From positions 62,001-126,000 of the IMG/VR virus record IMGVR_UViG_3300045125_000071: DNA of 64,000 nucleotides; one strand, written 5' to 3'. The position numbers and the translations under genes are program-made. The notes under the pieces are model-generated. The model searched no databases and was not told the origin of the DNA. It saw nothing but the letters and a program-made list of their open reading frames with translations. Shown in pieces: positions 17,145 to 58,944 of this stretch; within the stretch, counting starts at the first letter, position 1, and each line of letters begins with the position of its first letter.

Positions 17145-18863
17145 TTAAAGTGTCGAGACTGAATGTAGCCAACCTTTCACATCAATTACACCGAAGTAAC
17201 GGTTGTTAACCATTTTCTTAGCGTAACGGGTCATTATACCCTTGATTGGTGTGAAATTGAATGGGTTATACATTGTTGGGGTTAATTGTAAGGGCACATA
17301 AGGTGCATATACATAACCAGCGTCTAACAAGGACTTACCCTTATGTCCGATAAGGACTTTACCAGCTGGGAAATATGGGTCACGATATACCTGATATCTA
17401 CCTGCGAGAGTACCGATTTTCTCAATACCCATGTTGTATTGGTCTTGCTCAGGATGAGCGTTAGACACATGGAAATATTCAAGGTCATCAAACACTGCGG
17501 AAACTTCAGAGGATACAACAATCCAGTTAGCACCACCTCTTAAAGTTGTTTTATGGATTTGAGCAGAAACCTGGTTGATTTTGGTAATCAATGTTTGGTT
17601 CCAGTCTTTTTGTGTATAACCCTGGAATGTACCACCGCCAGATGCGCCGTACTTCCATTCGTTATAATCCCACTTAGCTTTCCATGCAGCACCTTTTCTA
17701 AGGTCACGGAGAATTTCCCTATCAACTTCAGCTGCGATTTGCTCGGAGAGAAGTGCGGTTAATTCAGCCTCAGCGTCGATATTGTGGAACGCGCTAACGT
17801 CTTGTGCTAATTCAGGAGACCAGCTAGCTCTGAGTTTTCTTTCAGTTACAGAAACTGTAACAGACTCAAGGTCAAAAGAAACTTCACCGATAGCATCTTC
17901 AAATTCGAGAGTAGCATATTGGCGATAAGTTGCTACGAAATCAGAACCTGCTAATGTTGTAGCTACTGTATGGTCAGTGAAACCAGATGTTGCACTGTAT
18001 GTTTGTAAATCAACACTTAAGTAAATTGTACCTTCTTCATCACAAATGTCATTGTATCTGCTAAGACCAGAACCACTCTTCTGTCCGTACTCAACAATAC
18101 CTTTACCATATTTCTGAGTTACAACGTTTAATGGTAATGATGCGCCGCTTTGAACTTTTGATGCTGAAACTTGTAATGATGCTAAGAATTCTTCACTATC
18201 CATTTCATTACCGTTAGCACCAATTAATTTACCCTCACCTGTCTTGCTGAATCCAGTAATCTTTAAAATTACACTTGATACAGTGTTACCAGTTGTATAA
18301 GTAACAGCGTTACCAGCAGAACCAGCGGAGAAGGTATGAAGTGAAGTACCTGTTAATGATATTGTACTGAAATCACCTTTTGAATAATCAAAAAGACCAG
18401 TAGATGCGTCATCACTTGTTTCATAGAAACGGTCATAAAGGTTGATACCAGTGTAACCAGTAGAAGGGTCTGTACCACCAGCAGTTCCAGGAATACCAAA
18501 TGGTGAATAGTGCGCACCATTATTTCTGTCCTGGATTTTAGGTACAAAATAGAACAATTTACCAATTGGTAAGTTCATAGCTTGTACGGAAACGATGTCG
18601 TTTGCCAACAACTTGGAGAATACTCTCCTGATGATTGGGAAAACCACAGTTTCAAATGAACCAGAAGCATCAGATACTGCTGCCTCGTTGATTAAATATG
18701 ATGCTTGGTTTTCATACAATTGCGCGATGTTATCTTTCTGATGGCCATCGAGACCGTCAAGAAATCCTAAATCATCCCATTTTCTAATAGTATCTTCTTT
18801 GATAACACGAAGGTGCTTAAGACCGATGTTACCAACCATACCTGATTCTAATAATGCTCCCAT
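17145..18863 (-). CDS. Major capsid protein, T4 gp23-like
   Basis: VSVQAMNLPIGKLFY, TERKLRASWSPELAQD..AFHNIDAEAEL, EIDRE-like VDREI, YAPYVPL, GIMTRYA. Confidence 0.95.
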   Translation of the reverse strand: MGALLESGMVGNIGLKHLRVIKEDTIRKWDDLGFLDGLDGHQKDNIAQLYENQASYLINEAAVSDASGSFETVVFPIIRRVFSKLLANDIVSVQAMNLPIGKLFYFVPKIQDRNNGAHYSPFGIPGTAGGTDPSTGYTGINLYDRFYETSDDASTGLFDYSKGDFSTISLTGTSLHTFSAGSAGNAVTYTTGNTVSSVILKITGFSKTGEGKLIGANGNEMDSEEFLASLQVSASKVQSGASLPLNVVTQKYGKGIVEYGQKSGSGLSRYNDICDEEGTIYLSVDLQTYSATSGFTDHTVATTLAGSDFVATYRQYATLEFEDAIGEVSFDLESVTVSVTERKLRASWSPELAQDVSAFHNIDAEAELTALLSEQIAAEVDREILRDLRKGAAWKAKWDYNEWKYGASGGGTFQGYTQKDWNQTLITKINQVSAQIHKTTLRGGANWIVVSSEVSAVFDDLEYFHVSNAHPEQDQYNMGIEKIGTLAGRYQVYRDPYFPAGKVLIGHKGKSLLDAGYVYAPYVPLQLTPTMYNPFNFTPIKGIMTRYAKKMVNNRYFGVIDVKGWLHSVSTL

Positions 18864-22361: not shown

Positions 22362-24178
22362 TTAATCGTTTAATATGTCTTTTATTTTAGTTTCCATTTC
22401 ATAAATATTCTTCTGTGCTTTTTCTATATTAAATAAATCAGATAAATTATTACCTTCGCCAAGAATATTCGTAAATTTATTTTTTGTTGATTCAGATAGT
22501 GGTGGTTCTCCCGTATCACCTGGCGGTGGTGCTGACATGGATGGACCCATTTCAGCACCTGGTGGTGCGGTTTCTTCACCACCAGTTTCATCGGCTTTTT
22601 TCTATCTTCTTCTGGTATACCATATTTTGAATCGACTTCATCAAATAATCTAGTTCTCTTAATTACATTCTGTGTGTTTGTTAATTCAAAACCAATAGCT
22701 CTTTCAAGTCTTTGTTGCTGTAAATCAAGAACTACTTCACTATCACTCATACCAAGTATATTCTTTTTAGCCCAAGTATGTGATACAGGTAATATACCTA
22801 TTTGTGATTGGTCAGATGTCGCGTCTTTATATAATGTTATTTTTTCCTTCCACTGTTCAATTTTTAACAAATCAGATTGTGATGATGGATTTGTTAATGC
22901 TAAAGTAAAATTACTTAATTCATCTTCAAGGCCTAATAAGTATAAATGAATTAACGCTATTTTATTTAATTCTTGTATTAATGATTTTTGTATTCTATTA
23001 ACAGTTCTTGCAAAACGAATATCCATCAAAGCTAATTGCTTACCATCACCAACAATTTCCTCAAAACCTAAAAACGCTTTTGGTATTCTTAATGCTGCTA
23101 GCATTTTCTTTTGAATATATTCAATATCCGCAATTTCACCCAAATTTTGAGCACCTGGTAAGGTATCTATTGGCGATGCCTGTGCTGGGTCACGAATAGG
23201 AATAAAGTAATCTTGGTCGATAGCCATTTGATTATAACGCATATCTACTTGACCATTTCTTGGGTCTTGTATAGGGTCTCTTTTAAACTTGTTTGCTACT
23301 CTTTGTACGTATGGTTCAATATCCTTATCGTCCATATTACCCACAAAGATTTTGAAAACTCTTCTTTCTGGTGCTCTCGATGTTCTATAAATTAACATCG
23401 CATCTTCAGCAAGAAGTAATTGTTTCCAAATCCTTCTGATTTTATCCAACATGGATGTACCATATGGTAGTTTTCTATCATCACCTAAAAGCCTGAAATG
23501 TGCTATTTCCCATGATTGAAATTCCATTTCTTTATTAGACCACTTGAATCTCAACTCACGACTAGGCATTGTTGTTTCAATGTTATTTGGCGTTTTTGAA
23601 GATGCTCCTTCCCATCTTTCAATTTCAATATTTGGTAATTGTTGACAACCAACAATACCTTCGTTTTGGTCTATCTTAAGATAAACAAAATTATCACCAT
23701 ACTTACACAAACCTCTCGTCCACATTTGTAGATTCGTATTGACATCTAATTTATTAATAAATAAATCTGTCAATATTTCTTTAACTCTATCCGACTCTGA
23801 ATATATTGATAATATTTCACCTTTTTCTGACATTGTTGTTGATTCTTCAGCATATATATCCAATGCTGCCGATATTTCGGGCGTGAACTCCATCGATTCA
23901 TAATCATAATACGCTGATAATCTATTTGGTTCGTAATAAACAGATTGATTATATAATGATTGGTCTAATTTCGTCCACTTATCTGCAATATATTGTGATT
24001 GTTGTGCTTGTAATAAAGCTTTTTCAAACTCCTCTTGCTTTGTGTTTTTAACAATTCATCTTTTCTAAAACTTACTTTTGGTACAGATTGCTGTTGTTCT
24101 CTGTCTTTTTTCATTAGGAAAACCAAATACTTGTGTAAGTTTTTGATATACTGTTAAATCTTTTTTAATATCTGCCAT
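22362..24178 (-). CDS. Portal protein, T4 gp20-like, frameshifted at both ends
   Basis: PEISAALDIYAEE, EDAMLIYRTSRAPERRVFKI.VGNM, DYFIP.R, IDTLPGAQNLGEIADIEY. Confidence 0.93.
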
Positions 24179-38699: not shown

Positions 38700-38744
38700 T
38701 ATATTTGTTATAGAAATGTCACAAACGACATTGTTCTTTGACAT
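38700..38744 (+). promoter_or_regulatory. Bacteroidota-type -7 promoter element plus boxA-like antiterminator
   Basis: TATATTTG at 38700-38707; GTTCTTTGACAT at 38733-38744. Confidence 0.6.
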
Positions 38745-38756
38745 AATGGTAAAGAT

Positions 38757-39047
38757 GGTCGAGTGATGAAATTGGTAGCACATGCAAGACTTATACAATT
38801 TGAGTGCACAAGAGGAAACTCTTGATGTAGAATTCCGTAAATTCGGTGAACCCTGTAAAATGGGAATACCGAGCCAAGCATCAGCAATGATGAAGGTGTA
38901 GAGACTAGACACGGAACACCTAAATCGTAAGATATGGTGAAGGTATAGTCCAGAGTACAAACACAGCAATGTGGTAGTGAAAACTATAGTACTAAGAAAA
39001 TCTTGTGGGCAGTAATGCCCGTGTGGGTTCGAACCCCACCTCGACTA
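38757..39047 (+). tRNA. trnL: tRNA-Leu(UAA), intron-containing (exons 38757-38792 and 38997-39047)
   Basis: Spliced: GGTCGAG/CTCGACT acceptor, CAAGA-CTTAAAA-TCTTG anticodon arm, long variable arm GGGCA-GTAA-TGCCC, GTGGG-TTCGAAC-CCCAC T arm. Confidence 0.92.
38793..38996 (+). mobile_element. Group I intron (204 nt, trnL/IC3-like), no ORF
   Basis: Inserted after U34, ends in G; P AAATTCGGTGAA, Q AATACCGAGCCAAG, R GTAGAGACT, S AAGGTATAGTCC; P3 TTCCGT/ACGGAA. Confidence 0.9.
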
Positions 39048-40641: not shown

Positions 40642-40745
40642 AGTCAGGTGGCGTAGTGGTATCGCAGCACCCTCACGGTTGAGACTAACGGCTAATGGCA
40701 CTCTGTATGATAAAGCTGACGCAGGTTCGATTCCTGCCCTGACTG
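40642..40745 (+). ncRNA. tRNA-scaffold RNA 2 (104 nt)
   Basis: AGTCAGG...CCTGACT-G; GCAGG-TTCGATT-CCTGC; insert closed by CAGC/GCTG. Confidence 0.85.
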
Positions 40746-40765
40746 CTAATCATATTATCTTCTTT

Positions 40766-41249
40766 GAAACAACTGTTGGTCAACACTGAACAAGTAACAG
40801 ATAAATCAGGTATGTAGAACCTAAAATTCTATAAAAGAATGGATGGTGTCTACATTGAAATTATCTACAATCCTCAACGTCAAGGTTGGAATTAATGACG
40901 AAATATAAAGGACAAAAACCTTTGCAGCTCCCACTGCTAAAGAGATGGGTAGAAACAAGTGTAGAACTATATTATCTGTTTAGTCTCATGGTTCTAAGAC
41001 ATGAGTAGGGTTTGGGTTGACGTGTAGTTTATTGTAAGAAAACTGAGCAGTACCTTTTATACTGGTACAATTAAATTTCCCGTCTTAGAGGGCGACAGTT
41101 GTTTCTTTCTTATGTGCTTTACACTAGAGATGGTAACACAGAATGTGTGTATTGCAGTCAATAAGATGTGTGTTGTTCTCTTGAGAAAGGAATGAAGGAG
41201 TAACAAGTTTATCGTTAACACCACTGGGGACTTCTCATCCCCATTTTTT
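40766..41249 (+). ncRNA. Large structured ncRNA candidate (about 480 nt), family unassigned
   Basis: Long-range helices 40766-75/41096-105 and 40796-804/40972-80, many local hairpins, no ORF, boxA-like motif upstream, terminator 41225-41249. Confidence 0.7.
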
Positions 41250-41273
41250 CTATTCTGACTAAAAATTAAAATT

Positions 41274-41429
41274 ATGGAAAACGAATTGGAGAAGAAAGAA
41301 AAATGTAAATGTGGTAATTCACCACAAGAATTGCATACATGTCCTTATGCGGAAGATGTACAAGGGGATAGTATAACCTTGTGCAATTGTTGTTCGGATT
41401 GTGAGAATCAATGCATTGCAGACATATAA
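41274..41429 (+). CDS. Small Cys-rich protein (51 aa)
   Basis: MENELEKKEKCKCGN...HTCPYAEDV...LCNCCSDCENQC; below ORF-track cutoff. Confidence 0.6.
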   Translation: MENELEKKEKCKCGNSPQELHTCPYAEDVQGDSITLCNCCSDCENQCIADI

Positions 41430-41590
41430 AAATAGCCAGGTGGTATCAGTTGTTTCTTTTTTATGTGTTAATGTTCATATTTTCTCTTGTTCACGTAACG
41501 TGAACAAAGAAAAATAAAACAGACCCACGCTTCCCATCTCGAAGGATAATGAGAGGGAATAATACGTCCTTTAAGGTCTGTTTTTAATAT

Positions 41591-41720
41591 AGTCAGTGGC
41601 GGAATTGGTTAGACGCGGTAGAGTCCGAAAGGTTAGCACTCTATGACTGCAAGCGAAACTCTGACTGCTAACACAAAGAGGAGTATAATTGCAATGCAGG
41701 TTCGAATCCTGTCCTGACTA
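41591..41720 (+). ncRNA. tRNA-scaffold RNA 3 (130 nt)
   Basis: AGTCAG(G missing)TGGCGGAATTGGTTAGACGC...GCAGGTTCGAATCCTGTCCTGACT-A. Confidence 0.85.
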
Positions 41721-41857
41721 CCGATGGTTAAAGTCCCTACGAGTTGTGACAATTAAAACGATGTTGTCATTATCGAAAGATACCTCACCATAAAACTCTG
41801 GGCAAACTCCCCTAACAGGAAACTGAACGGGTTGACAGCTTGGAAAGACAAGCAAAT

Positions 41858-41947
41858 AGTCAGGTGACGGAATGACATCCGTTAGAAAAGGTGTGAGGGC
41901 GAACGTGGTCGGAAAGCACCTAGTAGGTTCGAATCCTGCCCTGACTG
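41858..41947 (+). ncRNA. tRNA-scaffold RNA 4 (90 nt)
   Basis: Same acceptor and T arm; D stem ACGG/CCGT; insert closed by AGGTG/CACCT. Confidence 0.85.
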
Positions 41948-42065
41948 CTGATTCAGTTTGCCCGTGGTAACGGATTGATGGGAGAAATCCTTGCAATCTT
42001 CTGTAATCAAAATCCAATTATTGTCTCACTGGTAATTGGGCTAAATGTGAGAAAAAACGGGACAT

Positions 42066-42183
42066 AGTCAGGTGGCGGAATGGTGCCAAAGTATAAAACA
42101 AAGGGCAGGACACAAAGTCACTGAACACAGAGGAGAGGTTGAGGAACTCCCATTACTTACAGGTTCGAATCCTGTCCTGACTG
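42066..42183 (+). ncRNA. tRNA-scaffold RNA 5 (118 nt)
   Basis: Same scaffold; multi-hairpin insert closed by AAGTA/TACTT. Confidence 0.85.
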
Positions 42184-42276
42184 CTAAAACAACTAAGTTG
42201 ATTAACACCAGACAGTAACAAGAGGAAGCAGCACTATACCAGTTAAAGTCTGGGATTGTTACCTCATAATCTAAGA

Positions 42277-42342
42277 TATGAGTGGTTTGGGTTAATGTAT
42301 GACAGTTTTGAACAGAGAGTGGTTCGACTCCACTATTCATAC
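42277..42342 (+). pseudogene. Degenerate tRNA-like sequence
   Basis: TATGAGT/ATTCATA acceptor and AGTGG-TTCGACT-CCACT T arm; no credible D or anticodon arm. Confidence 0.4.
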
Positions 42343-42469
42343 TCTACTTAGAAGGCAGCTTAGTTGTTTTAAACTTATACTGGTTTTTGATACCGCTTTA
42401 CCGTTAGGAACGGGTATACCCCAAAACAGAATACAAAATGGTATGACAAGCCTGGAGAGACAGGCAAAT

Positions 42470-42609
42470 AGTCAGGTGGCGGAATTGGTAGACGCAGGGT
42501 CTACCTCAAGCGATTAGAGTATACGAGACGGGTGAAAGTTCCTCATTCCAAGTTGACCACGCTTACCCTTTAAAGGCAATTATACAGGTTCGATTCCTGT
42601 CCTGGACTG
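42470..42609 (+). ncRNA. tRNA-scaffold RNA 6 (140 nt)
   Basis: Leu-type D arm GCGGAATTGGTAGACGC; insert closed by AGGGT/ACCCT; one extra G in 3' strand. Confidence 0.85.
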
Positions 42610-42722
42610 CAAAAAATTAAACATATAGTGTATATCGATAAATGCATCGTTAATTATTTTGGCGATTATGGGTATTGTGTTTTTGGGGTATTGTTACACA
42701 AAAAGGTGGATTATAAAGATAT

Positions 42723-42799
42723 AGTCAGGTGGCTGAATTGGTGACAGAGGCACACCGTTAAACGACGGGTGGATGCGGGTTCGAATCCTGTCCTGACTG
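42723..42799 (+). ncRNA. tRNA-scaffold RNA 7 (77 nt)
   Basis: tRNA-sized but anticodon-position hairpin CCGT-TAAACG-ACGG is non-canonical. Confidence 0.8.
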
Positions 42800-42885
42800 C
42801 TAGGTAAGTTGCAAGTAAATGTCGTGATTCATGAACTTACGACCACTAGAAAGGAGCTGACTGCTGGGAAACGAGACAGCACTAT

Positions 42886-42962
42886 AGTCAGGTGGTGTAA
42901 TTGGTAGCACAACATCCGACAAGGGATGGAGGAGTCTAAAGGTTCGATTCCTGTCCTGACTA
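42886..42962 (+). ncRNA. tRNA-scaffold RNA 8 (77 nt)
   Basis: CATCC-GACAAG-GGATG 6-nt loop lacking U33. Confidence 0.8.
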
Positions 42963-43039
42963 CGATTAGAGGTATAGGGGTACCCTGAGGCGAAGTACAA
43001 GCCATGGTCACTGAATGTAAACCAACTCTAAACTAATTT

Positions 43040-43140
43040 AGTCAGGTGGTGAAATTGGCAGACGCAATGTGAAACGGTACAACTTATACTAAAGTAGCTT
43101 GGAGAAGTCCACTTTACAGGTTCGAATCCTGTCCTGACTA
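43040..43140 (+). ncRNA. tRNA-scaffold RNA 9 (101 nt)
   Basis: Same scaffold; insert duplicated at 39816. Confidence 0.85.
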
Positions 43141-43157
43141 CAAAAAACAAAAAAACT

Positions 43158-43337
43158 ATGAGCAACAATTCAAGTTCCAGTGGTATTGGTTTACCAACAA
43201 TTCTTTTTATTGTATTTTTGGTATTAAAACTAACTAATTACATTGATTGGTCATGGTGGTGGGTAACTTCTCCATTATGGATTTCTGCAATATTATATAT
43301 CATTCTCATTGTTGTTATTGAGAAAATTTTTCGTTGA
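43158..43337 (+). CDS. Small membrane protein (59 aa)
   Basis: MSNNSSSSGIGLPTILFIVFLVLKL...IDWSWWWVTSPLW. Confidence 0.7.
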   Translation: MSNNSSSSGIGLPTILFIVFLVLKLTNYIDWSWWWVTSPLWISAILYIILIVVIEKIFR

Positions 43338-43355
43338 CTTTGAAAATTAAATAAA

Positions 43356-43583
43356 ATGGACTATTCGGATGCAAGAATAAAAGCATTGTATCTTAAATGG
43401 AAGACATCTACATGTGACCAAGGAGAAAAGTGTTGGTGTCGTGTGATTAAATGCGAAGAATCATTGATGTATAAGGAGTATGAAGGTGATGATGAACAAG
43501 AATACAATGTGGTGGGCCCAGGGCTATTGGACAAAGAAACTGTTGAACATATTGTCAAACTTCACAACGATTCAATTAAGTGA
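43356..43583 (+). CDS. Hypothetical protein
   Basis: 75-aa ORF with C.QGEKCWC motif. Confidence 0.55.
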   Translation: MDYSDARIKALYLKWKTSTCDQGEKCWCRVIKCEESLMYKEYEGDDEQEYNVVGPGLLDKETVEHIVKLHNDSIK

Positions 43584-43599
43584 ATCTCAAAAAACAAAC

Positions 43600-43945
43600 A
43601 TGAACAAAGTCGTAATTAACGGAAACACAGTAAGTGGTAATTTTGCTGCCGACAACCTTATTATAATTAACGGAAAGGTTTTTGTCAATGGGAAAGATGT
43701 TACACCTGATGCAAAAGAAATAAACATTACCATTCAAGGGTCTGTTGAAAAATTGGAGGTCGATGCTTGTTCAAAAATAACCATTGATGGTGATGTCCAT
43801 AATGTCACAACCAAAAGCGGTGATGTCGATATTTCGGGGAACGTTAGCGGTAATGTTCAAACCATGTCTGGGTGATGTTGATTGCGGAAATGTCAGTGGT
43901 TCGATTTCAACAATGAGTGGTGACATTAAGCACAAACATATTTAA
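43600..43945 (+). CDS. Beta-solenoid-like hypothetical protein (one indel near 43870)
   Basis: Repeating GDV/GNV..V.T.SG units. Confidence 0.6.
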
Positions 43946-43952
43946 ATAAAAC

Positions 43953-44068
43953 AGTCAGGTGGCGGAGTGGTAGACGCAGAGTTTAGGGTTACTGATGTAG
44001 ATAGGTAACTGGTCACGCAGCGAGATAGCGTACTCTTTCTATCGCAGGTTCGATTCCTGTCCTGACTA
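43953..44068 (+). ncRNA. tRNA-scaffold RNA 10 (116 nt)
   Basis: Insert closed by AGAGT/ACTCT with GTTAC/GTAAC hairpin. Confidence 0.85.
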
Positions 44069-44137
44069 CTAATCTTTTTTAACTTCAGATTAACCATAAA
44101 AAGAAAAGTTAATGACATCTTGGAAAGACAAGAAAAT

Positions 44138-44227
44138 AGTCAGGTGGCGCAAGTGTGAAGAATAATCACCATGGGTAAGCGAGCTGTGGAAACACGGAGG
44201 TTGTGGGTTCGAATCCCACCCTGACTA
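44138..44227 (+). ncRNA. tRNA-scaffold RNA 11 (90 nt)
   Basis: Compensatory T stem GTGGG/CCCAC; hairpin in D loop; anticodon position is CTGTG-GAAA-CACGG. Confidence 0.85.
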
Positions 44228-44241
44228 CAAAAATAAAACTT

Positions 44242-44394
44242 ATGAAAAAGTATAACGTCCTATTGGGTATTATTGGGTATATTTTGACAGTGTGTGTAGC
44301 GCCAGCATTGTTTATTGAAAAACATTACATATTAGCACTAATATCTTTTATAGGGGGAATTGCAGTAATCGATTATAACAGAGGTGGCAATTAA
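44242..44394 (+). CDS. Small membrane protein
   Basis: Two hydrophobic segments. Confidence 0.5.
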   Translation: MKKYNVLLGIIGYILTVCVAPALFIEKHYILALISFIGGIAVIDYNRGGN

Positions 44395-44400
44395 TTACAT

Positions 44401-44547
44401 AGTCAGGTGGCGCAATGGTAGACGCTGTAAAAGTAAGATATGGGGATTGTGCACTCGGTGTTATCCTACGCACAAGGCTTAGATAGTTTTAGCAAAAACG
44501 GAAAGTCTTACAAAACTATTATACAGGTTCGAATCCTGTCCTGACTG
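44401..44547 (+). ncRNA. tRNA-scaffold RNA 12 (147 nt, longest)
   Basis: Same scaffold; branched insert. Confidence 0.85.
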
Positions 44548-44562
44548 CAAAAAATTAAAAAT

Positions 44563-44778
44563 ATGAAACAACCTAAAATACAAATTACGGACATCCACGG
44601 AGAAGATTGGGGTGTTAAAAAAGTCACACATCTTGGTTGGAATATTAATGGAAACTTAGTCGAAATAAAAGTTGACTTTATGGGTAATTATTACGACTTG
44701 ATGGTAATGTATGATATTGATTGTACTGGTACATTTACCAATATTCATGGTAACTTAAAAGGTAAACTAATTTTTTGA
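44563..44778 (+). CDS. Hypothetical protein
   Basis: 71-aa ORF between elements. Confidence 0.55.
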   Translation: MKQPKIQITDIHGEDWGVKKVTHLGWNINGNLVEIKVDFMGNYYDLMVMYDIDCTGTFTNIHGNLKGKLIF

Positions 44779-44788
44779 ATAAAAAAAC

Positions 44789-44895
44789 AGTCAGGTGGCG
44801 GAATGGTAGACGTAGAATCGGAAACCTAATGAGGTAGTGAACGAAAGATTTGGATAACTGCGGTTATCGTACAGGTTCGATTCCTGTCCTGACTG
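44789..44895 (+). ncRNA. tRNA-scaffold RNA 13 (107 nt)
   Basis: Variable-arm-like GATAAC-TGCG-GTTATC; anticodon arm replaced. Confidence 0.85.
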
Positions 44896-44909
44896 CAAAA
44901 AGGAAAAGT

Positions 44910-45173
44910 ATGATACTTTGGAAGTGGCAAAATGGAAGACAACATAATTGCGAATATCAGAAGTTCCCACTATGGTATTTTAAGTTATGGAAGTTTGGGT
45001 TTGATTGTTACATTCTCAGTTATAATGAGAACCAAACATTACCCAAACATAAAGACCCTATTGTGAATGGAAAACACTGGAGATTGAATATCGGATATGG
45101 TAATTCAAATTTTCTTTGTGAAAAATTAATTTTTGGTAAAAAAGATTGGATTATTATCCGTATATTTGTTTAG
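44910..45173 (+). CDS. 2OG-Fe(II) oxygenase-like small protein (3' end frameshifted)
   Basis: Y......LPKHKDP....HWRLNI (HxD motif). Confidence 0.45.
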   Translation: MILWKWQNGRQHNCEYQKFPLWYFKLWKFGFDCYILSYNENQTLPKHKDPIVNGKHWRLNIGYGNSNFLCEKLIFGKKDWIIIRIFV

Positions 45174-45258
45174 GCCTGATTTATATGAACATTCCCTTCA
45201 TATAATTGGGAAAACAAGAAAACTCTCTATTGGGTTTGCAAAGTATATGTAAGTAAAT

Positions 45259-45374
45259 GGTCAGGTGGCGAAATAGAGCAGACGCATGATGATAAAGTAG
45301 GGTCCGAATGTACTCGGAGGAAATTGATTCAATTAGGTTGCAAACTAATATAGGTTCGAATCCTGTCCTGACTA
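45259..45374 (+). ncRNA. tRNA-scaffold RNA 14 (116 nt)
   Basis: GGTCAGG/CCTGACT; three-hairpin insert (TCCGA/TCGGA, AATTG/CAATT, ATTAG/CTAAT). Confidence 0.85.
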
Positions 45375-45491
45375 CGAGGGAAATAATCTTAACCAGCCTC
45401 AAATGTTGAATCTTGTTGACCATTCCTGGTTTATACAAGTGCGAACGGGCCTAATGATGGTAAGGTTGACAGCGGGGAAAGACCCGACCAT

Positions 45492-45577
45492 GGTCAAGTA
45501 GCTTATAATGGGTATATGGGTATTAACTCTTCCTTTAAGTAGGTTTAGCATTGTGGGTTCAAATCCCATCTTGACCG
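45492..45577 (+). ncRNA. Divergent tRNA-like element (86 nt)
   Basis: GGTCAAG/CTTGACC acceptor, GTGGG-TTCAAAT-CCCAT T arm, no canonical anticodon arm. Confidence 0.65.
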
Positions 45578-49702: not shown

Positions 49703-50383
49703 GTGACTTTTTTAAATTTTGACCATACTTATAATAAGTATGGCAAATTTAAACACAAAAAAAAGTATCATTTTATTTACAAAACAACAAATTTAAAAAC
49801 TGGTCATTTTTATATTGGGATGCACTCAACCAATAATTTAAATGATGGTTATTTGGGTAGTGGTAAAAGATTAACACGTTCCATAAGAAAGTATGGTAAA
49901 GAAAATTTTAAATTAGACATTTTGGAATTTTTACCAGATAGAAAAACATTAGAATTAAAAGAAAAAGAATTAGTCAATGAAGAACAATTAAAAGACCCAT
50001 TATGCATGAATATATGCGTTGGGGGTCAAGGTGGTTTCATATCAATAGAAGGATGCACTAAAGGTGGTGTAATCGCAGCAAAAATTCATGTTGATAGAAT
50101 AAAAAATGATTCAGAATATAGGGAAAAACATATATTGAGGTTTAGTGAAAAAGTAAAAAAACTTTGGAGAGATGGTGTTCTTAAACAACACGATTTTAGA
50201 GGTGGAAAACGGAAAGAAGAAACTAAAAGAAAAATAAGTGAAACAAATAAAATAAAACAAAAAGGAATTTTAAATTCACAATTTGGAACTCGATGGATTA
50301 CTGATGGTTCTGAAAATAAAAAAATAAAAAATACCGAGACAATACCAAATGGATGGGTCTTAGGTAGAAAAATGAAAAAATAA
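49703..50383 (+). mobile_element. GIY-YIG (Seg-like) homing endonuclease, paralogue of 39094
   Basis: FIYKTTN...FYIGMHST...DGYLGSG...GGQGG...GWVLGR. Confidence 0.88.
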
Positions 50384-50853: not shown

Positions 50854-50926
50854 TAGGGTGTATATCAATCGGTAGATTTCGCGTTTTGGGTACGTGAGGT
50901 TGCCAGTTCGAGTCTGGCCACCCTAA
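50854..50926 (+). tRNA. tRNA-Pro(UGG)
   Basis: TAGGGTG/CACCCTA acceptor; CGCGT-TTTGGGT-ACGTG; GCCAG-TTCGAGT-CTGGC. Confidence 0.9.
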
Positions 50927-50928
50927 CA

Positions 50929-52548: not shown

Positions 52549-52816
52549 AGTAATCAAAGAATTGAAAACCCAGAAGATAGGGGATATCAGTAGAGTATCT
52601 AATGAAGATGCTGATGAAAAAGTAAAGTCTGGATATTTTATGTATGCCCCAAAGTCAGAATGGAAACAGATGACAAAACAAAAGGTTGAATCCACTGAAA
52701 CATCTAAAGAAAACACTAAAACATTGAAAAAAATCAAAGAAATAACGAAACCGATAAAAAAACTAAAAATCCTAAAAAAACAAAGCAAAATAGTTGATTA
52801 TATCAGAATTAGTTCT

Positions 52817-52859
52817 TACTTTTGTATTGTTATCGGAAACGAAACAAGCTCTTTGAGAA
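52817..52859 (+). promoter_or_regulatory. Bacteroidota -7 element plus boxA-like motif
   Basis: TACTTTTG 52817-52824; GCTCTTTGAG 52848-52857. Confidence 0.55.
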
Positions 52860-52864
52860 AAAAT

Positions 52865-53045
52865 AAGCAAACGAAGACTGTGGTGTAACCCCACGGTATA
52901 TGAATCCTAAGACCCGTTTTATTCGCGGTATGGGCGGTGAAGGTAGAGACCACTATAAGTTGGGAGTTGCTGCCTAATACGAAATGTGGCCGCTGGCGCA
53001 GGGATGTGTTAGTCATGATGTGTAACGGGCACGAAAAGTTTGCTT
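52865..53045 (+). ncRNA. Structured ncRNA candidate (about 180 nt)
   Basis: Ends pair (AAGCAAAC/GTTTGCTT); CTGTGG/CCACGG hairpin; CCCGTT/AACGGG; GC-richer than flanks; U tract after. Confidence 0.6.
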
Positions 53046-53058
53046 TTTTTTAAAATAT

Positions 53059-53125
53059 TTTGGTAATTCGATTTTTTTACTTACCTTTGTTTAAGAATCG
53101 GAAAACGATAAAAGTTCTTTGAAAA
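53059..53125 (+). promoter_or_regulatory. Full Bacteroidota sigma-ABfr-type promoter plus boxA
   Basis: TTTG 53059-62, 19 nt, TACCTTTG 53082-89; GTTCTTTGAAAA 53114-53125. Confidence 0.75.
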
Positions 53126-53129
53126 TATA

Positions 53130-53975
53130 AATGGGCGGTCTATAGTCCAGTAATGACTCGAAAGAGTTGTTATAAAAATAAACTATGAAAGTAGTATAAA
53201 GTGGTCTCCTTGGTTAAAAGAGACTGCGGTTTATCGCAAGATGAACTTGAGTAGAAAAGCGAGACATCGTTTGACCCGTAGTAGCGAGGGTAACACTGTA
53301 GTGAAAGGGGTTGAATGACTGGGCGATGTGGGTCGTCTGGTTGAGGTGGGAACACCAATAAGAGTAACTCGTAGGGTAGTTGCAAGAAATATGGTCATCC
53401 AACTATATGATTGCGGTATCCAATACAATGGGTGTCTTAAAGTTGAAAGACATGATGAAAAACAGGTGGTGCTGTTATCATCCTTAGTTAGAATCTACCA
53501 AGGTTCTGATTATGAAGAAATCCAAAAGTATGGAGGTAGGGATATCTCAGAGAGTAGTTGTGTATTTTGCGGTTCAAAAGACTGTGAAGCACTGGTGACG
53601 GACCACTACTTTCAAAATCCACAAACCAAAAACTGTTACTTTTGACTAACAAGTTTAAAAAAGCAGGAAAAGTGTCCGTCAGTCATCAGAGACAGGTGGC
53701 TACTCAGTAACGAGTTGTTCGTTGCCACAAAGGGTCCCAAGCCCAATGTGATTTTTGTGAAAGTTCTCTAATCCCGCAAGGATGAGTTGGTGAGGCATCA
53801 TCGAAGAGCAGCGATTAGCAAGAGAGTATCTGGTGACTCAAGGATTGGTTAATCTAATTGACCGCCATTGATTGGTACTACTCAAAAGGTAGTGGATAAG
53901 AAGAGAACCTCAAAAGGGATAATGCTTCGAAAGTCAATCACAAGAACTTGTAATCTCAGAGTTTTTACTTTAATT
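53130..53975 (+). ncRNA. Giant structured ncRNA (about 850 nt), probably GOLLD-like
   Basis: Own promoter and terminator; GGCGGTC(53134-40)/GACCGCC(53860-66) long-range helix; numerous hairpins; phage tRNA-island context. The family name is inference from size and context. Confidence 0.65.
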
Positions 53976-53979
53976 GCTT

Positions 53980-54005
53980 ACCCAACCCAATCGGTTGGGT
54001 TTTTT
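53980..54005 (+). terminator. Intrinsic terminator
   Basis: acccaacc-caatc-ggttgggt-ttttt. Confidence 0.85.
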
Positions 54006-54076
54006 ATTTTTATATATTTATGAATATATTTGGCTCGAATTTTGTACTTTTACCATAAAATTCATATATTTATTTT

Positions 54077-54535
54077 ATGAAAGAAAACATTATCAACTTG
54101 AATAAAGCAATGCCCAAAAATAAGTCAGACAAACAATCAATAACCTCCAGGTTAATTGAATTTATAATATATGTGATGAGTGCTGCTGTCATCATGTATT
54201 ATCTTTTTAAAATTGTTTTTGGGTCACCAGGTCAACTTAAAGAAAACAATGAAACTATTGGTGCGATAAATAGTAAAATAGATTCGATATATGCATTACA
54301 AGATTTAACGCAACAAGGGATAACTAATTTAAAAGATGACCAAATCGAATTAAAAAATATGATTAACAATAATCAGATAATGATTAAAGAGAATAATGAG
54401 GAAATTTCAGCGTTAAAAAAAGTTGTTAATCAAAAAATCAATATGGCTAATCAAACTATTAATACACAAAATAGAAGAATAGTTGAATTAGAACAAAAAA
54501 GTTACAATAGTCTTGATAGTTTTTTTAGAGCATAG
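54077..54535 (+). CDS. Membrane-anchored coiled-coil hypothetical protein
   Basis: One TM segment then heptad-rich region. Confidence 0.6.
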   Translation: MKENIINLNKAMPKNKSDKQSITSRLIEFIIYVMSAAVIMYYLFKIVFGSPGQLKENNETIGAINSKIDSIYALQDLTQQGITNLKDDQIELKNMINNNQIMIKENNEEISALKKVVNQKINMANQTINTQNRRIVELEQKSYNSLDSFFRA

Positions 54536-56042: not shown

Positions 56043-57515
56043 TTATTTTATCAAATATTTCATTATTCTTTTCATCTCGTTGATTTGATTATCAACTTGT
56101 GTTCTCTTTGCAATTTCAATTGCATCATCATAACTTAAATTAGGATTTTCATAATATGCATCCTCAACCGCAGCCATAGCAGCACCAATAGCTTTACCTT
56201 GTTTAAACCCGATGTTTATCAAATCATTTCCATTAATTGGTAATTTTGGCTTATTCTTATCCAATTGCATATTTAATTTTTCTAATCTATTCTTAACAAT
56301 TTCAATTTGTTCTGGCATGGAAGAATGTTCGCTATGCGCAATATTGTCCGCATGAATTAAATCCAAAATATCCTCAAGATTTTGACCAACTGTAACAACG
56401 AATTTCCTTAATGTCTTATCTGATATATTTGCAGCATCTGGTCCTCCATGTTTTAATCTCATATGGTTTTTTACACCAGCAACGACAGCATCAATCAATT
56501 CATTTGGATATTTTAACCTTATCATAATTTTTTTGACCATATCAGCCCCAACTTCCTCATGTTGATAAAAATGGACCGAACCTTCTGGTGATACAGTCTT
56601 CGTTAGAGTCTTGCCAATATCGTGAAATAACCCCATTAGACGCGTTTTAAGCCTGGGCGGTGTCTTTGATAGAACATCCATGCTGTGCATGAAAACATCG
56701 TCTTTATGGTGCGCATTTTGCCTCATACCAACAGCAGAATCAAACTCCCCTATGATATGTGACAATAGACCCGTAACCTTCATTAATCTGAACGCTTTTC
56801 TTGGGTCAGTAGTCATTAACATCTTATCTATTTCATCTCTAATTCTTTCAGATGAAATTGTTTTAATAAGTTCAGCATTCTTTTTAATATTTTTTATTAC
56901 GCTGGTTTCCATATCGAACCCATATTTGCAAGCAAATCTAATTGCCCTTAACATCCTCAATGGGTCTTCTTTGAATATTAATTCAGCGTCCTGCGTGGTT
57001 CTTATAATACCATTTTTGATGTCATCAATACCTTTACCACTAATATCTAAAATTTCACCTGTTGAAACATTTTTTAATAATGAATTTATAGTTAGGTCTC
57101 GCCTCAAAGCATCGTCCTCAATTTTACCAGCAACAACTTCAGGTTTTCTTGAACCAGGTGTATATTCTTCTTTTCTTGGTGCAACAAATTCTAATTCAAT
57201 TGATGGTAAATCTTGATTGTTATTATTAAGTGACAATTTGGCAGTTCCAAACTTAGGATATATGACAGGATTGCTGTCTTGTTTAAAATTACCCAATTCT
57301 TTACCTAACCATGTTGCGAAATTTATACCAGCATCTAAATTACCGATAACAGTAAAATCTAAATCCTTTGCTGGTTTACCCATTATTTCATCTCTCACAG
57401 CACCACCAGCTAAAAATACTTTATTCTCCCATTCTGTACCTTGAATTTTATTTTTCAAAAATTCTAATACAGTATATTCATCTGTTGATTCTAAAATTAA
57501 TTTTTTATAATACAT
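56043..57515 (-). CDS. cca: CCA-adding tRNA nucleotidyltransferase with HD domain
   Basis: LAGGAVRD...KDLDF, RKEEY..GSRKP loop, EDDALRRDLTINSL, EDPLRMLRAIRFA, ERI.DE, HH..DV..HS, FHDIGK. Confidence 0.92.
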   Translation of the reverse strand: MYYKKLILESTDEYTVLEFLKNKIQGTEWENKVFLAGGAVRDEIMGKPAKDLDFTVIGNLDAGINFATWLGKELGNFKQDSNPVIYPKFGTAKLSLNNNNQDLPSIELEFVAPRKEEYTPGSRKPEVVAGKIEDDALRRDLTINSLLKNVSTGEILDISGKGIDDIKNGIIRTTQDAELIFKEDPLRMLRAIRFACKYGFDMETSVIKNIKKNAELIKTISSERIRDEIDKMLMTTDPRKAFRLMKVTGLLSHIIGEFDSAVGMRQNAHHKDDVFMHSMDVLSKTPPRLKTRLMGLFHDIGKTLTKTVSPEGSVHFYQHEEVGADMVKKIMIRLKYPNELIDAVVAGVKNHMRLKHGGPDAANISDKTLRKFVVTVGQNLEDILDLIHADNIAHSEHSSMPEQIEIVKNRLEKLNMQLDKNKPKLPINGNDLINIGFKQGKAIGAAMAAVEDAYYENPNLSYDDAIEIAKRTQVDNQINEMKRIMKYLIK

Positions 57516-58366: not shown

Positions 58367-58552
58367 ATGGTAAAGAAATTTTTAGATTTTTTGAAATTGT
58401 CTTTTGCAAAAACACCAATTACTAAAAATGTAGTTGATGTCGAATTGAAAAATTCCGTATCTTTGTCATCTGAACCAGCAACAGATGTTGTTGAAAAAAA
58501 GAAAAGAGGTAGGAAGAAAAAGAAGAGTCTGCACAATAATATATGGGGGTGA
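58367..58552 (+). CDS. Small hypothetical protein
   Basis: Late motif upstream; basic KKKRGRKKK tail. Confidence 0.45.
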   Translation: MVKKFLDFLKLSFAKTPITKNVVDVELKNSVSLSSEPATDVVEKKKRGRKKKKSLHNNIWG

Positions 58553-58941
58553 CAGGTTTTGACAGGTAGTTGAATGGCAAACAGGCATGTCGGAGCAGAT
58601 TTAACTCCGTATAATCTGAATCAAAAAACAAAAGGCGAAGTTTATCGCAACATGGAAATTGCAGGTCTTCTTGCAACTTCTAAAGTGGCTGCCTAATTAG
58701 CACCTACTTAACGGGTCGATGGACACATAACCTTGGAACAGAAGTCCCTACGGTGTGGTTTCTACCAAAAAAGGAATAAAGGTCTCGTTAGGGGTACTAC
58801 CGATTAAAGTGAACCCCCACAGTTGTAGGTGATGATGGAAAAATAAGAACCTTCTATTTGTTGGTTATGAACTAATCAAATAAGCATGTAGGCTGTTTGT
58901 TAATCATTACTCTGGACTTGGCTTCAATGCCAACACCTCCA
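58545..58941 (+). ncRNA. ssrA: tmRNA; predicted tag (A)GEVYRNMEIAGLLATSKVAA at 58634-58696
   Basis: GGGGGTG/CACCTCC-A acceptor with G3:U70, 5' GACAGGTTTTGAC, T arm, tag ORF ending AA-TAA. Confidence 0.92.
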
Positions 58942-58944
58942 CTC

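What the first reader, a model, noticed from the sequence alone, without database searches (positions are those of the whole stretch)
53059..54005. GOLLD-sized giant RNA as a self-contained transcription unit
Seen: a canonical Bacteroidota promoter, boxA, about 850 nt of GC-enriched hairpin-dense sequence closed by GGCGGTC/GACCGCC, then a terminator. Known: GOLLD RNAs are about 800-nt phage RNAs of unknown function found near tRNA clusters. Inference: a GOLLD-like member in a Bacteroidota jumbo phage, co-occurring with the scaffold array.
Basis: partly seen in the sequence, partly recalled or inferred. Interest (0 to 1): 0.65.

Follow-up and report, generated by a model that had tools for sequence, protein, structure and literature searches.

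The report
GOLLD giant RNA gene in phage
This is a genuine, full-length copy of the known ~830-nt phage "GOLLD" RNA, which self-assembles into RNA-only nanocages, carried by a freshwater jumbo phage as its own small gene with a Bacteroidota-type promoter, an rRNA-style boxA leader and a terminator.

Summary
Rfam's GOLLD model (RF02032) matches window 53550-53962 (+) end to end at 307.7 bits, against a cut-off of 150. That model covers only the conserved 3' domain. The 417 nt before it (53133-53549) are the GOLLD 5' domain: they align with 103 IMG/VR loci and two 635-642 kb huge phages. They share the opening motifs of env-38, the GOLLD solved by cryo-EM as a 14-mer cage.

The unit is self-contained:
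- -33 TTTG at 53059-62
- -7 TACCTTTG at 53082-89
- boxA GTTCTTTGA at 53114-22
- ~830-nt RNA at 41% GC, against 30% for the window
- intrinsic terminator at 53980-54000 followed by a T-run

One detail fails. The "closing helix" GGCGGTC/GACCGCC exists in the sequence and in the single-sequence fold, but covariation in 46 homologues rejects it. Each arm belongs to a different, well-supported helix.

The boxA leader is kept in 43 of 44 homologues, and the same motif sits in Bacteroidota 16S leaders. Contacts that bridge chains in the solved cage (L20-J13/15, L21a) covary here.

Freshwater metatranscriptomes hold abundant GOLLD-sized contigs of relatives. Verdict: a new member of a known family. 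Its biological function is still unknown.

The parts
53059..53062 (+). -33 element TTTG of a Bacteroidota sigma-A-type promoter
   Evidence: Sequence. It sits 19 nt before the -7 box. Consensus as quoted in PMC7366714.
53082..53089 (+). -7 element TACCTTTG (TAnnTTTG). The predicted start of transcription is about 53094-53097 (inferred, not mapped).
   Evidence: Sequence. The same motif lies upstream of the boxA-like element in 38 of 44 homologues, against 20.6% of background 250-nt windows.
53097..53109 (+). Small leader hairpin ATCG-GAAAA-CGAT just before boxA, in the position of a boxB-like stem. Weak on its own.
   Evidence: Sequence. Relatives have a hairpin at the same place, for example GTTCTC-AACG-GAGAAC in L155, L127, L209 and L211.
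53114..53125 (+). boxA-like element GTTCTTTGAAAA in the transcribed leader
   Evidence: YTCTTTRA occurs within 250 nt upstream in 43 of 44 homologues, against 5.8% of background windows. GTTCTTTGA lies 84-216 nt upstream of 16S rRNA in 16 of 24 distinct Bacteroidota leaders.
53133..53549 (+). GOLLD 5' domain (the 'cap' domain in the env-38 cage), starting GGGCGGTCTATAGTCC
   Evidence: nhmmer and alignment to 103 IMG/VR loci and two huge phages. Covariation-supported helices. It shares the opening motifs of the env-38 construct.
53138..53143 (+). 5' strand of the first long-range helix (GUCUAU). It pairs with 53251-53256 (GUAGAA).
   Evidence: Five pairs hold in 46/46 and one in 43/46. Two pairs have compensatory changes.
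53328..53332 (+). Loop GUGGG of a 5'-domain hairpin. It pairs with UCCAC at 53618-53622, just after P14. Whether this is within one chain or between chains was not determined.
   Evidence: Five columns are paired in 44-45 of 46 sequences, with GC/AU/CG and UA/CG switches.
53550..53962 (+). GOLLD conserved 3' domain (P14-P27). It includes the P14 hairpin at 53560-53592, an A-rich variable linker at about 53624-53680, and the last hairpin with loop GUAAUCUCA at 53946-53962.
   Evidence: Rfam RF02032, 307.7 bits, E 3.7e-87, model positions 1-416 of 416.
53666..53667 (+). GG in linker J13/15 that covaries with CC at 53737-53738 in the loop UCCCAAG. This fits the published L20-J13/15 kissing contact (bridge B7 of the env-38 cage).
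   Evidence: Column pairs 657-731 (GC 37/UA 9) and 658-730 (GC 30/CG 15/AU 1), each 46/46. The bridge is described in PMC12286853.
53771..53783 (+). Hairpin AUCC-CGCAA-GGAU with the self-complementary GC at 53776-53777. It fits loop L21a (symmetric kissing loop, bridge B8).
   Evidence: In the family 35 sequences have ..GC.. and 11 have ..CG.. at this loop. This is the same GC/CG switch that PMC12286853 reports for L21a.
53846..53864 (+). Local hairpin UGGUUAA-UCUAA-UUGACCG.
   Evidence: Rfam consensus hairpin. Its top four pairs are paired in 44-46 of 46, with GC/AU compensation.
53980..54010 (+). Intrinsic terminator: 8-bp stem ACCCAACC/GGTTGGGT followed by a T-run
   Evidence: Terminator scan. 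Most homologues have a comparable G+C stem and T-run directly after GOLLD.

Best explanation
Window 53059-54010 (+) is a complete, stand-alone gene for a GOLLD RNA (Rfam RF02032), carried by a T4-like jumbo phage from fresh water that most likely infects a member of Bacteroidota.

How it most likely works:
1. Host RNA polymerase starts at a sigma-A-type promoter (-33 TTTG, -7 TACCTTTG).
2. The ~38-nt leader carries an rRNA-type boxA (GTTCTTTGA). I infer that it recruits the host NusB/S10 antitermination machinery, so that a ~0.9-kb untranslated transcript is completed rather than cut short by Rho.
3. Transcription ends at the intrinsic terminator at 53980-54010.
4. The ~830-nt core (53133-53962) folds into two domains, a 5' 'cap' and a conserved 3' 'ring'.
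5. Like the solved env-38 and Streptococcus GOLLDs, it self-assembles into a closed, dihedral, RNA-only nanocage. Most likely this is a 14-mer, because the RNA appears colinear with env-38 and keeps P11a, P21a and a candidate P21b.
6. The cage acts during infection in an RNA/translation context. The gene sits among phage tRNA genes, a CCA-adding enzyme and a tmRNA.

What is shown: family membership, domain architecture, covariation of the helices and of two contacts that bridge chains in the solved cage, conservation of the promoter, boxA and terminator frame, and abundant RNA of relatives in nature.

What is inferred: the start site, Nus recruitment, the oligomer number, the host, and any cargo or cellular role.
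For: Identity:
- RF02032 matches at 307.7 bits against a cut-off of 150, over the full model. It is the single copy in the 251-kb record.

5' domain:
- It aligns with 103 IMG/VR loci and with LR756502 and LR745206, both of which also pass the Rfam cut-off.
- In 46 non-redundant sequences RNAalifold gives 191 pairs, 147 with compensatory changes.
- The env-38 construct starts with the same motifs..GGCCGC.TATGGTCG..AAATAAA..CGAAAG..GGATAAAGTGG...

Cage contacts:
- J13/15 GG pairs with loop CC in 46/46 on both pairs, with GC/UA and GC/CG switches.
- The L21a loop switches between GC and CG. Both agree with PMC12286853.

Transcription unit:
- Promoter and terminator.
- boxA is present in 43/44 homologues against a 5.8% background. 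The -7 box is present in 38/44 against 20.6%.
- The identical motif occurs in 16/24 Bacteroidota 16S leaders.

RNA in nature:
- In four freshwater metatranscriptome runs, contigs of relatives lie almost only on 53088-53941. Depths reach the thousands, and contigs are 681-798 nt long.

Phage context:
- Gp23 capsid, Gp20 portal, terminase, tRNA nucleotidyltransferase, tRNAs and tmRNA.
Against: - No read set shows this exact locus transcribed. The RNA-library contigs are 85-99% alike and come from relatives. Contigs cannot show ends or strand, and RNA libraries can contain DNA. The empty flanks may only reflect flanks that differ between phages.
- Oligomerisation is inferred from homology and covariation. 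It was not tested, and stoichiometry differs between GOLLDs (10, 12 or 14; PMC12990946).
- Colinearity with env-38 rests on the ~190 nt of its 5' end shown and on position arithmetic. I made no full alignment.
- The boxA role rests on sequence identity with rRNA-leader motifs and on conservation. No binding or antitermination data exist.
- One GOLLD from another phylum's phage (Caulobacter phage Ccr34) has no such motif upstream, so boxA is not a general GOLLD feature.
- The host is not identified. The genome-wide pattern scan gave one true hit, on a short contig binned to Saccharibacteria, which is probably a mis-binned phage piece.
Confidence: 0.85

Rival explanations
1. It is a new family of giant RNA that only resembles GOLLD.
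For: The Rfam model says nothing about the first 417 nt. The window has an extra hairpin at 53149-53173 that most homologues lack.
Against: The match covers the full model at twice the gathering score. The 5' domain shares the opening motifs of env-38, the type structure. The extra hairpin is an insertion at a variable site, and L214 and L140 also have one there.
Confidence: 0.02
2. The two ends of the RNA are clamped by the helix GGCGGUC/GACCGCC, so the molecule is a single closed domain.
For: The complement is a perfect 7 bp. Both the MFE and the centroid fold of the single sequence pair these arms. Many close relatives keep 5-7 possible pairs.
Against: There is no compensatory change. The proposed pairs are standard in only 25-46 of 46 sequences, with uncompensated G-to-C and U-to-C changes. 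Each arm has another partner that is well supported: the 5' arm's in 43-46 of 46 with compensation, the 3' arm's in 44-46. The chance of an exact 7-mer complement somewhere in 830 nt is about 5% by my own arithmetic. In the env-38 cryo-EM structure the 5' and 3' regions form separate domains.
Confidence: 0.05
3. The stretch is protein-coding, or it is a decayed remnant that is no longer used.
For: A 105-codon GTG-started frame lies at 53328-53645.
Against: Substitutions across 46 homologues follow base-pairing rather than a reading frame: 147 pairs carry compensatory changes. Every model position is matched. The promoter, boxA and terminator are intact and conserved. Relatives are abundant in RNA libraries.
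Confidence: 0.02
4. The GTTCTTTGA motif is not a Nus-binding boxA. It could instead be a processing signal, or a site for a phage factor shared by the phage's non-coding RNA genes.
For: The same short motif also follows a tRNA-like gene at 40760 and precedes other non-coding units at 38733 and 52849. No binding data exist. The distance to GOLLD varies from 15 to 111 nt.
Against: It is letter-for-letter the motif found at a fixed zone upstream of 16S rRNA in a phylum-wide sample of Bacteroidota. In several relatives it is preceded by a hairpin, as in rRNA leaders. NusB:S10 interface residues are reported as conserved in Bacteroidota (PMC13753749).
Confidence: 0.3

Closest known systems
GOLLD RNA env-38 (JCVI_SCAF_1096627009515/1239-410; PDB 9MEE, D7 14-mer nanocage; Kretsch et al. 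2025, PMC12286853)
   Same: - Length: about 830 nt here, 833 nt for env-38.
- Domain boundary: the 3' domain starts at about position 418 here and 421 in env-38.
- Same opening motifs of the 5' domain.
- P11a-type hairpin with a GAAA loop.
- The L20-J13/15 complementarity and the L21a self-complementary dinucleotide sit at matching places (position 644-645 here, 656-657 in env-38).
- A-rich variable linker after P14.

   Different: - The 5' end reads GGGCGGUCUAUAGUCC here and GGCCGC.UAUGGUCG in env-38.
- This RNA has an extra hairpin at 53149-53173.
- It is not preceded by tRNA-Met. It has its own promoter and boxA and follows an unknown ~190-nt RNA unit.
- I could not align the whole env-38 sequence, and multimerisation of this RNA is untested.
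GOLLD RNAs of the huge phages LR756502.1 (642 kb) and LR745206.1 (635 kb) (Al-Shayeb et al. 2020 genomes)
   Same: They are full-length GOLLDs at 275-287 bits. They are 65-70% identical to the window over both domains and start with the same GGGCGG..UAUAGUCC. LR745206 has GTTCTTTGA 69 nt upstream. Phages of this size class are predicted to infect Bacteroidetes.
   Different: They are embedded between tRNA genes, with a tRNA directly downstream in LR756502 and upstream in LR745206, rather than ending at a terminator. LR756502 has neither motif within 250 nt upstream. The source paper does not mention GOLLD.
Streptococcus agalactiae GOLLD (PDB 9L0R dodecamer) and the GOLLDs of Lactobacillales, Mycobacterium and Caulobacter phages
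   Same: The conserved 3' domain is the same, and they too sit in phage or prophage regions next to tRNAs.
   Different: Sag GOLLD is 700 nt, lacks P9, P11a-c and P21b, and forms a 12-mer. Mycolicibacterium and Ccr34 carry a tRNA inside the linker; this one does not. Ccr34 has no boxA-like motif upstream.
ROOL RNA (RF03087-type nanocage RNA)
   Same: It is a large phage-associated RNA near tRNAs that forms an RNA-only cage.
   Different: Its sequence and fold are unrelated, it forms an 8-mer or 6-mer, and its two halves are intertwined. No ROOL match was found in the window.
rRNA operon leader antiterminator (boxA, NusB/S10-dependent)
   Same: The motif GTTCTTTGA is identical to that in Bacteroidota 16S leaders. 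It lies between a promoter and a long, structured, untranslated RNA, and is sometimes preceded by a hairpin.
   Different: It is here on a phage gene for a non-ribosomal RNA. Function is untested, and no boxC was looked for.

Membership tests
GOLLD RNA (Rfam RF02032) | Covariance-model score at or above the curated gathering score (150 bits) | tested here: met
   307.7 bits, E 3.7e-87.
GOLLD RNA (Rfam RF02032) | Complete conserved 3' domain (P14-P27) with its signature loops | tested here: met
   Model positions 1-416 of 416 are matched with no truncation. UCAAAAG in L14 and GUAAUCUCA in the last loop are both present.
GOLLD RNA (Rfam RF02032) | A ~400-nt 5' domain, giving a total near 800 nt | tested here: met
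   53133-53549 aligns to 103 IMG/VR loci and to the start of env-38. The total is about 830 nt.
GOLLD RNA (Rfam RF02032) | Helices supported by covariation | tested here: met
   191 consensus pairs in 46 sequences, 147 with compensatory change.
GOLLD RNA (Rfam RF02032) | Nucleotides of intermolecular bridges (L20-J13/15 kissing loop; self-complementary L21a) | tested here: met
   GG 53666-67 pairs with CC 53737-38 and covaries in 46/46. The L21a loop shows the GC/CG switch in 35 versus 11 sequences. My assignment to the published bridge names is by position and description, not by a residue-level map.
GOLLD RNA (Rfam RF02032) | Self-assembly into a closed homo-oligomeric cage | not testable with these tools
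   This needs mass photometry or cryo-EM of the transcript.
GOLLD RNA (Rfam RF02032) | Phage or prophage location near tRNA genes | tested here: met
   The record encodes Gp23 capsid, portal and terminase. tRNA-Pro lies at 50854-50927, with further tRNAs and tRNA-like genes at 40.6-49.6 kb, a tmRNA at 58545-58944, and a CCA-adding enzyme at 56043-57515.
GOLLD RNA (Rfam RF02032) | Expression rising during lytic growth | not testable with these tools
   There are only RNA-library contigs of relatives, with no time course and no cultured host.
rRNA-type boxA antitermination element | Sequence equal to the boxA of the host phylum's rRNA leaders | tested here: met
   GTTCTTTGA occurs in 16 of 24 distinct Bacteroidota 16S leaders, 84-216 nt upstream.
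rRNA-type boxA antitermination element | Position in the transcribed leader, conserved among homologues | tested here: met
   It lies 25 nt after the -7 box and 11 nt before the RNA core. It is present in 43/44 homologues against a 5.8% background.
rRNA-type boxA antitermination element | Binding of NusB-S10 and read-through of Rho-dependent termination | not testable with these tools
   This needs biochemistry or reporter assays.
Bacteroidota sigma-A promoter | -7 TAnnTTTG with -33 TTTG about 19-21 nt upstream | tested here: met
   TTTG at 53059-62, 19 nt, TACCTTTG at 53082-89. The consensus is quoted; the 19-21 nt spacing is from my own knowledge. The start site is not mapped.

The most novel reading that the evidence does not exclude
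In the large freshwater, Bacteroidota-phage branch of GOLLD, the RNA is made as an rRNA-like transcription unit. A host-type promoter is followed by a conserved boxA, often with a preceding hairpin. The nanocage RNA would then be synthesised, and perhaps folded co-transcriptionally, by the same Nus-modified polymerase that makes ribosomal RNA.

I found no paper in the searchable library that links GOLLD with boxA or with Bacteroidota. GOLLD is also unmentioned in the paper describing the largest phage genomes, two of which carry it.
Probability: 0.45. Interest if true: 0.55.

Novelty: new member of a known kind. Interest (0 to 1): 0.38.

Why it matters
GOLLD is one of the largest bacterial and phage non-coding RNAs. 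It is now known to build RNA-only cages larger than a ribosome, yet nobody knows what the cages do. This copy does not change that picture.

It does place a canonical, env-38-type GOLLD in a defined genetic frame: a host-type promoter, an rRNA-style boxA, the RNA, and a terminator. That frame is shared by dozens of freshwater phages, several with contigs of 260-480 kb, and the RNA itself is also in two of the largest phage genomes known (635-642 kb).

If the boxA leader is functional, it links cage-RNA synthesis to the ribosomal-RNA transcription machinery. It also offers a simple handle, boxA mutants and Nus factors, for expressing and perturbing GOLLD in Flavobacterium or Bacteroides. The abundance of GOLLD-sized contigs in lake metatranscriptomes shows that these RNAs are made at high levels in nature.

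Tried and rejected
- An exact 21-mer from P14 found nothing in IMG/VR.
- The 5'-end pattern in genome contigs returned 120 rows and then stopped at its limit. nhmmer found only one to be a real GOLLD (L296, a 5.9-kb contig binned to Saccharibacteria). It therefore gave no host.
- Weinberg 2009 (PMC4140389) and Morgado 2020 (PMC7549688) are not held. What I say about the original description rests on later papers and on my own knowledge.
- I could not find the residue-level tables of env-38 bridges in the supplements. My naming of L20-J13/15 and L21a is therefore by position and description only.
- The 5-bp pairing GUGGG 53328-32 with UCCAC 53618-22 could not be matched to a named published contact.
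- The capsid-nearest genomes do not carry GOLLD: Flavobacterium phage immuto, Microcystis phage Mel-JY01, LR756508 and LR756511. No cultured system turned up.
- Caulobacter phage Ccr34's GOLLD has no boxA-like motif upstream.
- I avoided count of structure pairs because it would need a ~1000-character typed structure string. I computed the same counts by script instead.
- The ~190-nt unit upstream (52862-53050) folds no better than shuffles (z = -1.63), matches no Rfam family, and has no homologue among the fetched loci beyond its promoter.
Full report
**What is there**

Rfam release 15 was scanned over the whole window at gathering thresholds. GOLLD (RF02032) matches at 53550-53962 on the + strand with 307.7 bits (cut-off 150, E 3.7e-87), covering model positions 1-416 of 416 with no truncation. 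It is the only copy in the 251,358-bp IMG/VR virus record that holds the window, which CheckV rates 75% complete.

The Rfam model describes only the conserved 3' domain of GOLLD. Published work describes GOLLD as a universally conserved 3' region plus a less conserved 5' region. The env-38 RNA is 833 nt, with 5' residues 1-420 and 3' residues 421-833 forming separate domains of a D7 14-mer cage (PMC12286853).

**The 5' domain**

The 417 nt before the Rfam match (53133-53549) are not covered by Rfam, so I looked for relatives.

- blastn against GenBank phages found two uncultured huge phages, LR756502.1 (642 kb) and LR745206.1 (635 kb). They align over both halves and both pass the GOLLD cut-off at 275 and 287 bits.
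- From the three-way alignment I took the conserved 5' end GGGCGGYYTATAGTCC as a pattern. It has 111 exact matches in IMG/VR.
- An nhmmer profile shows that 103 IMG/VR loci fetched by my two pattern scans are real homologues, most of them full length over both domains. Several lie on contigs of 260-480 kb.
- After removing near-duplicates, 46 full-length sequences remain (alignment A2).
- The env-38 construct printed in the supplement of PMC12286853 begins with the same succession of motifs: GGCCGC.TATGGTCG, AAATAAA, CGAAAG, GGATAAAGTGG, GAGGGTAACAC. It is clearly of the same 5'-domain type as a sub-group of A2.

The window therefore holds a canonical, env-38-type, full-length GOLLD of about 830 nt.

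**Structure**

RNAalifold on A2 gives 191 consensus pairs, 147 of which have at least one sequence with both sides changed and the pair kept. The single sequence folds better than all 20 shuffles, with z = -4.63. The stretch is 41.4% G+C in a 30.1% window.

- GGCGGTC (53134-53140) and GACCGCC (53860-53866) are truly complementary, and both the MFE and the centroid fold of the single sequence pair them.
- Across the 46 sequences the seven proposed pairs are standard pairs in only 25, 35, 44, 37, 46, 31 and 33 sequences. The changes on the 5' side are never compensated.
- The 3' arm is part of a local hairpin, 53846-53864. That hairpin is in the Rfam consensus. Its top four pairs are paired in 44-46 of 46, with GC-to-AU compensation.
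- The 5' arm's GUCUAU (53138-53143) pairs with GUAGAA (53251-53256). Five pairs hold in 46/46 and one in 43/46. Two pairs switch between UA/CG and among CG/UA/AU/GC.

The RNA is therefore not clamped end to end. This agrees with the separate 5' and 3' domains seen by cryo-EM.

**Signs that it can build the cage**

Two contacts that the cryo-EM paper describes as intermolecular bridges can be followed in A2.

- The paper reports a kissing interaction between L20 and the linker J13/15, and a symmetric kissing loop L21a whose internal dinucleotide switches between GC and CG.
- In A2 the linker dinucleotide (GG at 53666-53667 in the window) and the loop dinucleotide (CC at 53737-53738, loop UCCCAAG) are complementary in 46 of 46 sequences on both pairs. 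The switches are GC/UA and GC/CG/AU.
- The hairpin at 53771-53783 has loop CGCAA with GC at 53776-53777. In the family, 35 sequences have the GC form and 11 the CG form.
- The window also has the P11a-type hairpin with a GAAA loop, and a hairpin at 53788-53803 that fits P21b. Streptococcus GOLLD, a 12-mer, lacks both.
- A further 5-bp pairing between a 5'-domain loop (GUGGG, 53328-53332) and UCCAC just after P14 (53618-53622) covaries strongly. I could not tie it to a named published contact.

These data make assembly into an env-38-like cage likely. I put this at about 0.75 for some closed multimer, and lower for exactly 14 chains. They do not prove it.

**The transcription unit**

- The promoter fits the Bacteroidota consensus: TTTG at 53059-62, a 19-nt spacer, TACCTTTG at 53082-89.
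- The terminator scan finds an 8-bp G+C stem at 53980-54000 followed by a T-run.
- Between promoter and RNA lies GTTCTTTGAAAA (53114-53125).

Among 44 non-redundant homologues with at least 150 nt of upstream sequence:

| Motif | Upstream of GOLLD | Background 250-nt windows of the same loci |
|---|---|---|
| YTCTTTRA within 250 nt (mostly 15-111 nt before the RNA) | 43 of 44 | 5.8% |
| TAnnTTTG upstream of that motif | 38 of 44 | 20.6% |

Most homologues also end in a comparable terminator. 15 of 43 have a tRNA within 300 nt upstream, mostly tRNA-Met as for env-38. 4 of 43 have a tRNA directly downstream.

To test the 'boxA' label I fetched 16S rRNA leaders from a phylum-wide sample of Bacteroidota genomes. 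GTTCTTTGA lies 84-216 nt before the 16S start in 16 of 24 distinct leaders. The motif is thus the same as the rRNA-leader element of the presumed host phylum.

In several relatives it follows a short hairpin, as in rRNA leaders. In the window the hairpin is only 4 bp (53097-53109). That this element recruits NusB/S10 is an inference. NusB:S10 interface residues are reported as conserved in Bacteroidota (PMC13753749), but nothing has been measured for GOLLD.

A GOLLD from a Caulobacter phage has no such motif upstream. The leader is therefore a trait of this branch, not of the whole family. No paper in the searchable library mentions GOLLD together with boxA or with Bacteroid*.

**Is it expressed?**

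The word index found parts of the stretch in lake and freshwater metagenomes and in six metatranscriptome runs, with no run holding more than 20% of the sampled words.

I laid four RNA-library runs from three studies on 52600-54400 at 85% likeness or better. Their contigs lie almost only between 53088 and 53941. Summed depths are in the hundreds to thousands, and nothing lies on 53942-54400. Several contigs are GOLLD-sized: 681, 758, 783 and 798 nt.

These contigs come from relatives, not from this phage. Contigs cannot show ends or strand, and the flanks differ between phages, so empty flanks prove little. The result shows that RNAs of this GOLLD branch are abundant in lakes. It does not show that this locus is transcribed.

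**Context and host**

- The window encodes a T4-type major capsid protein (17145-18863, -), a portal (22424-23893, -) and a terminase-like protein.
- Near GOLLD lie a tRNA nucleotidyltransferase (56043-57515, -), a GIY-YIG homing endonuclease (49703-50383), tRNAs and tRNA-like genes (40.6-50.9 kb) and a tmRNA (58545-58944).
- The capsid's nearest cultured relative is Flavobacterium phage vB_FspM_immuto at 41% identity. That phage has no GOLLD.
- Al-Shayeb et al. predicted Bacteroidetes hosts for the phages above 634 kb. Two genomes of that size class (635 and 642 kb) carry the closest named GOLLD relatives. Their paper does not mention GOLLD.

**Verdict**

It is a new member of a known family, so the novelty is modest.

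The closing helix should be dropped.

Three things are worth keeping:
- the conserved promoter-boxA-GOLLD-terminator frame in a large freshwater branch, most likely of Bacteroidota phages
- the presence of GOLLD in two of the largest known phage genomes
- the covariation support, within this branch, for two of the published cage contacts

The biological function of GOLLD remains unknown, and this locus alone does not resolve it.

Noticed in passing
window 38700-38960 (+): A Bacteroidota -7 box (TATATTTG, 38700) and a boxA-like GTTCTTTGA (38733) precede about 200 nt of non-coding sequence. Its core is CCGAGCCAAGC ... GATGAAGGTGTAGAGACTAGAC ... CACCTAA. From memory only, this looks like the P7-P9 core of the Azoarcus-type (IC3) group I intron. 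Rfam's Intron_gpI does not detect it at E <= 0.1. The same core occurs at 76-88% identity, unannotated, in unrelated phages: the 735-kb LR756501, Pelagibacter phage HTVC120P, Agrobacterium phage Atu_ph07 and Ralstonia podophages.
   Followed up: partly
window 52817-53050 (+): A separate ~190-nt non-coding unit lies directly upstream of GOLLD. It has its own -7 box (TACTTTTG, 52817) and a boxA-like CTCTTTGAGAA (52849). It contains GGGCGGTGAAGGTAGAGACC (52929-52948), a partial copy of the motif at 38889-38905. It shares ATGGGCGGT with the GOLLD 5' end. It matches no Rfam family, has no homologue in the fetched loci beyond the promoter, and folds no better than shuffles (z = -1.63).
   Followed up: partly
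window 40642-45577 (+): Rfam finds a run of tRNA-model matches that are 86-116 nt long: 40642-40745, 43040-43140, 43953-44068, 44138-44227, 44789-44895, 45259-45374 and 45492-45577. These are tRNA-like genes with inserts, and ARAGORN calls only one of them. One ARAGORN call at 42886 has a two-base anticodon '(ca)'. A boxA-like TTCTTTGA follows the first one at 40760.
   Followed up: no
window 58545-58944 (+): Rfam detects a phage-encoded tmRNA at 85.5 bits over the full model. ARAGORN does not report it. The tag peptide was not read.
   Followed up: no
L002 (LR756502.1 434685-435091) and L003 (LR745206.1, locus 2353-2758): Two of the largest published phage genomes, at 642 and 635 kb, each carry a full-length GOLLD flanked by tRNAs. 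The paper describing genomes of this size class does not mention GOLLD.
   Followed up: yes
window 53149-53173 (+): This GOLLD has an extra hairpin with a GAAA loop (GACUC-GAAA-GAGUU) near its 5' end. 43 of the 46 aligned homologues lack it. L214 and L140 have a different insertion at the same site.
   Followed up: no
L388 (Caulobacter phage Ccr34, KY555147.1 102772-103258, minus strand): The record annotates a tRNA-Gly at 103122-103193 inside the span that the Kretsch alignment lists as GOLLD. This is another case of a tRNA embedded in the GOLLD linker. No boxA-like motif lies upstream, but there is a sigma-70-like TTGACG-N17-TAGAAC.
   Followed up: partly
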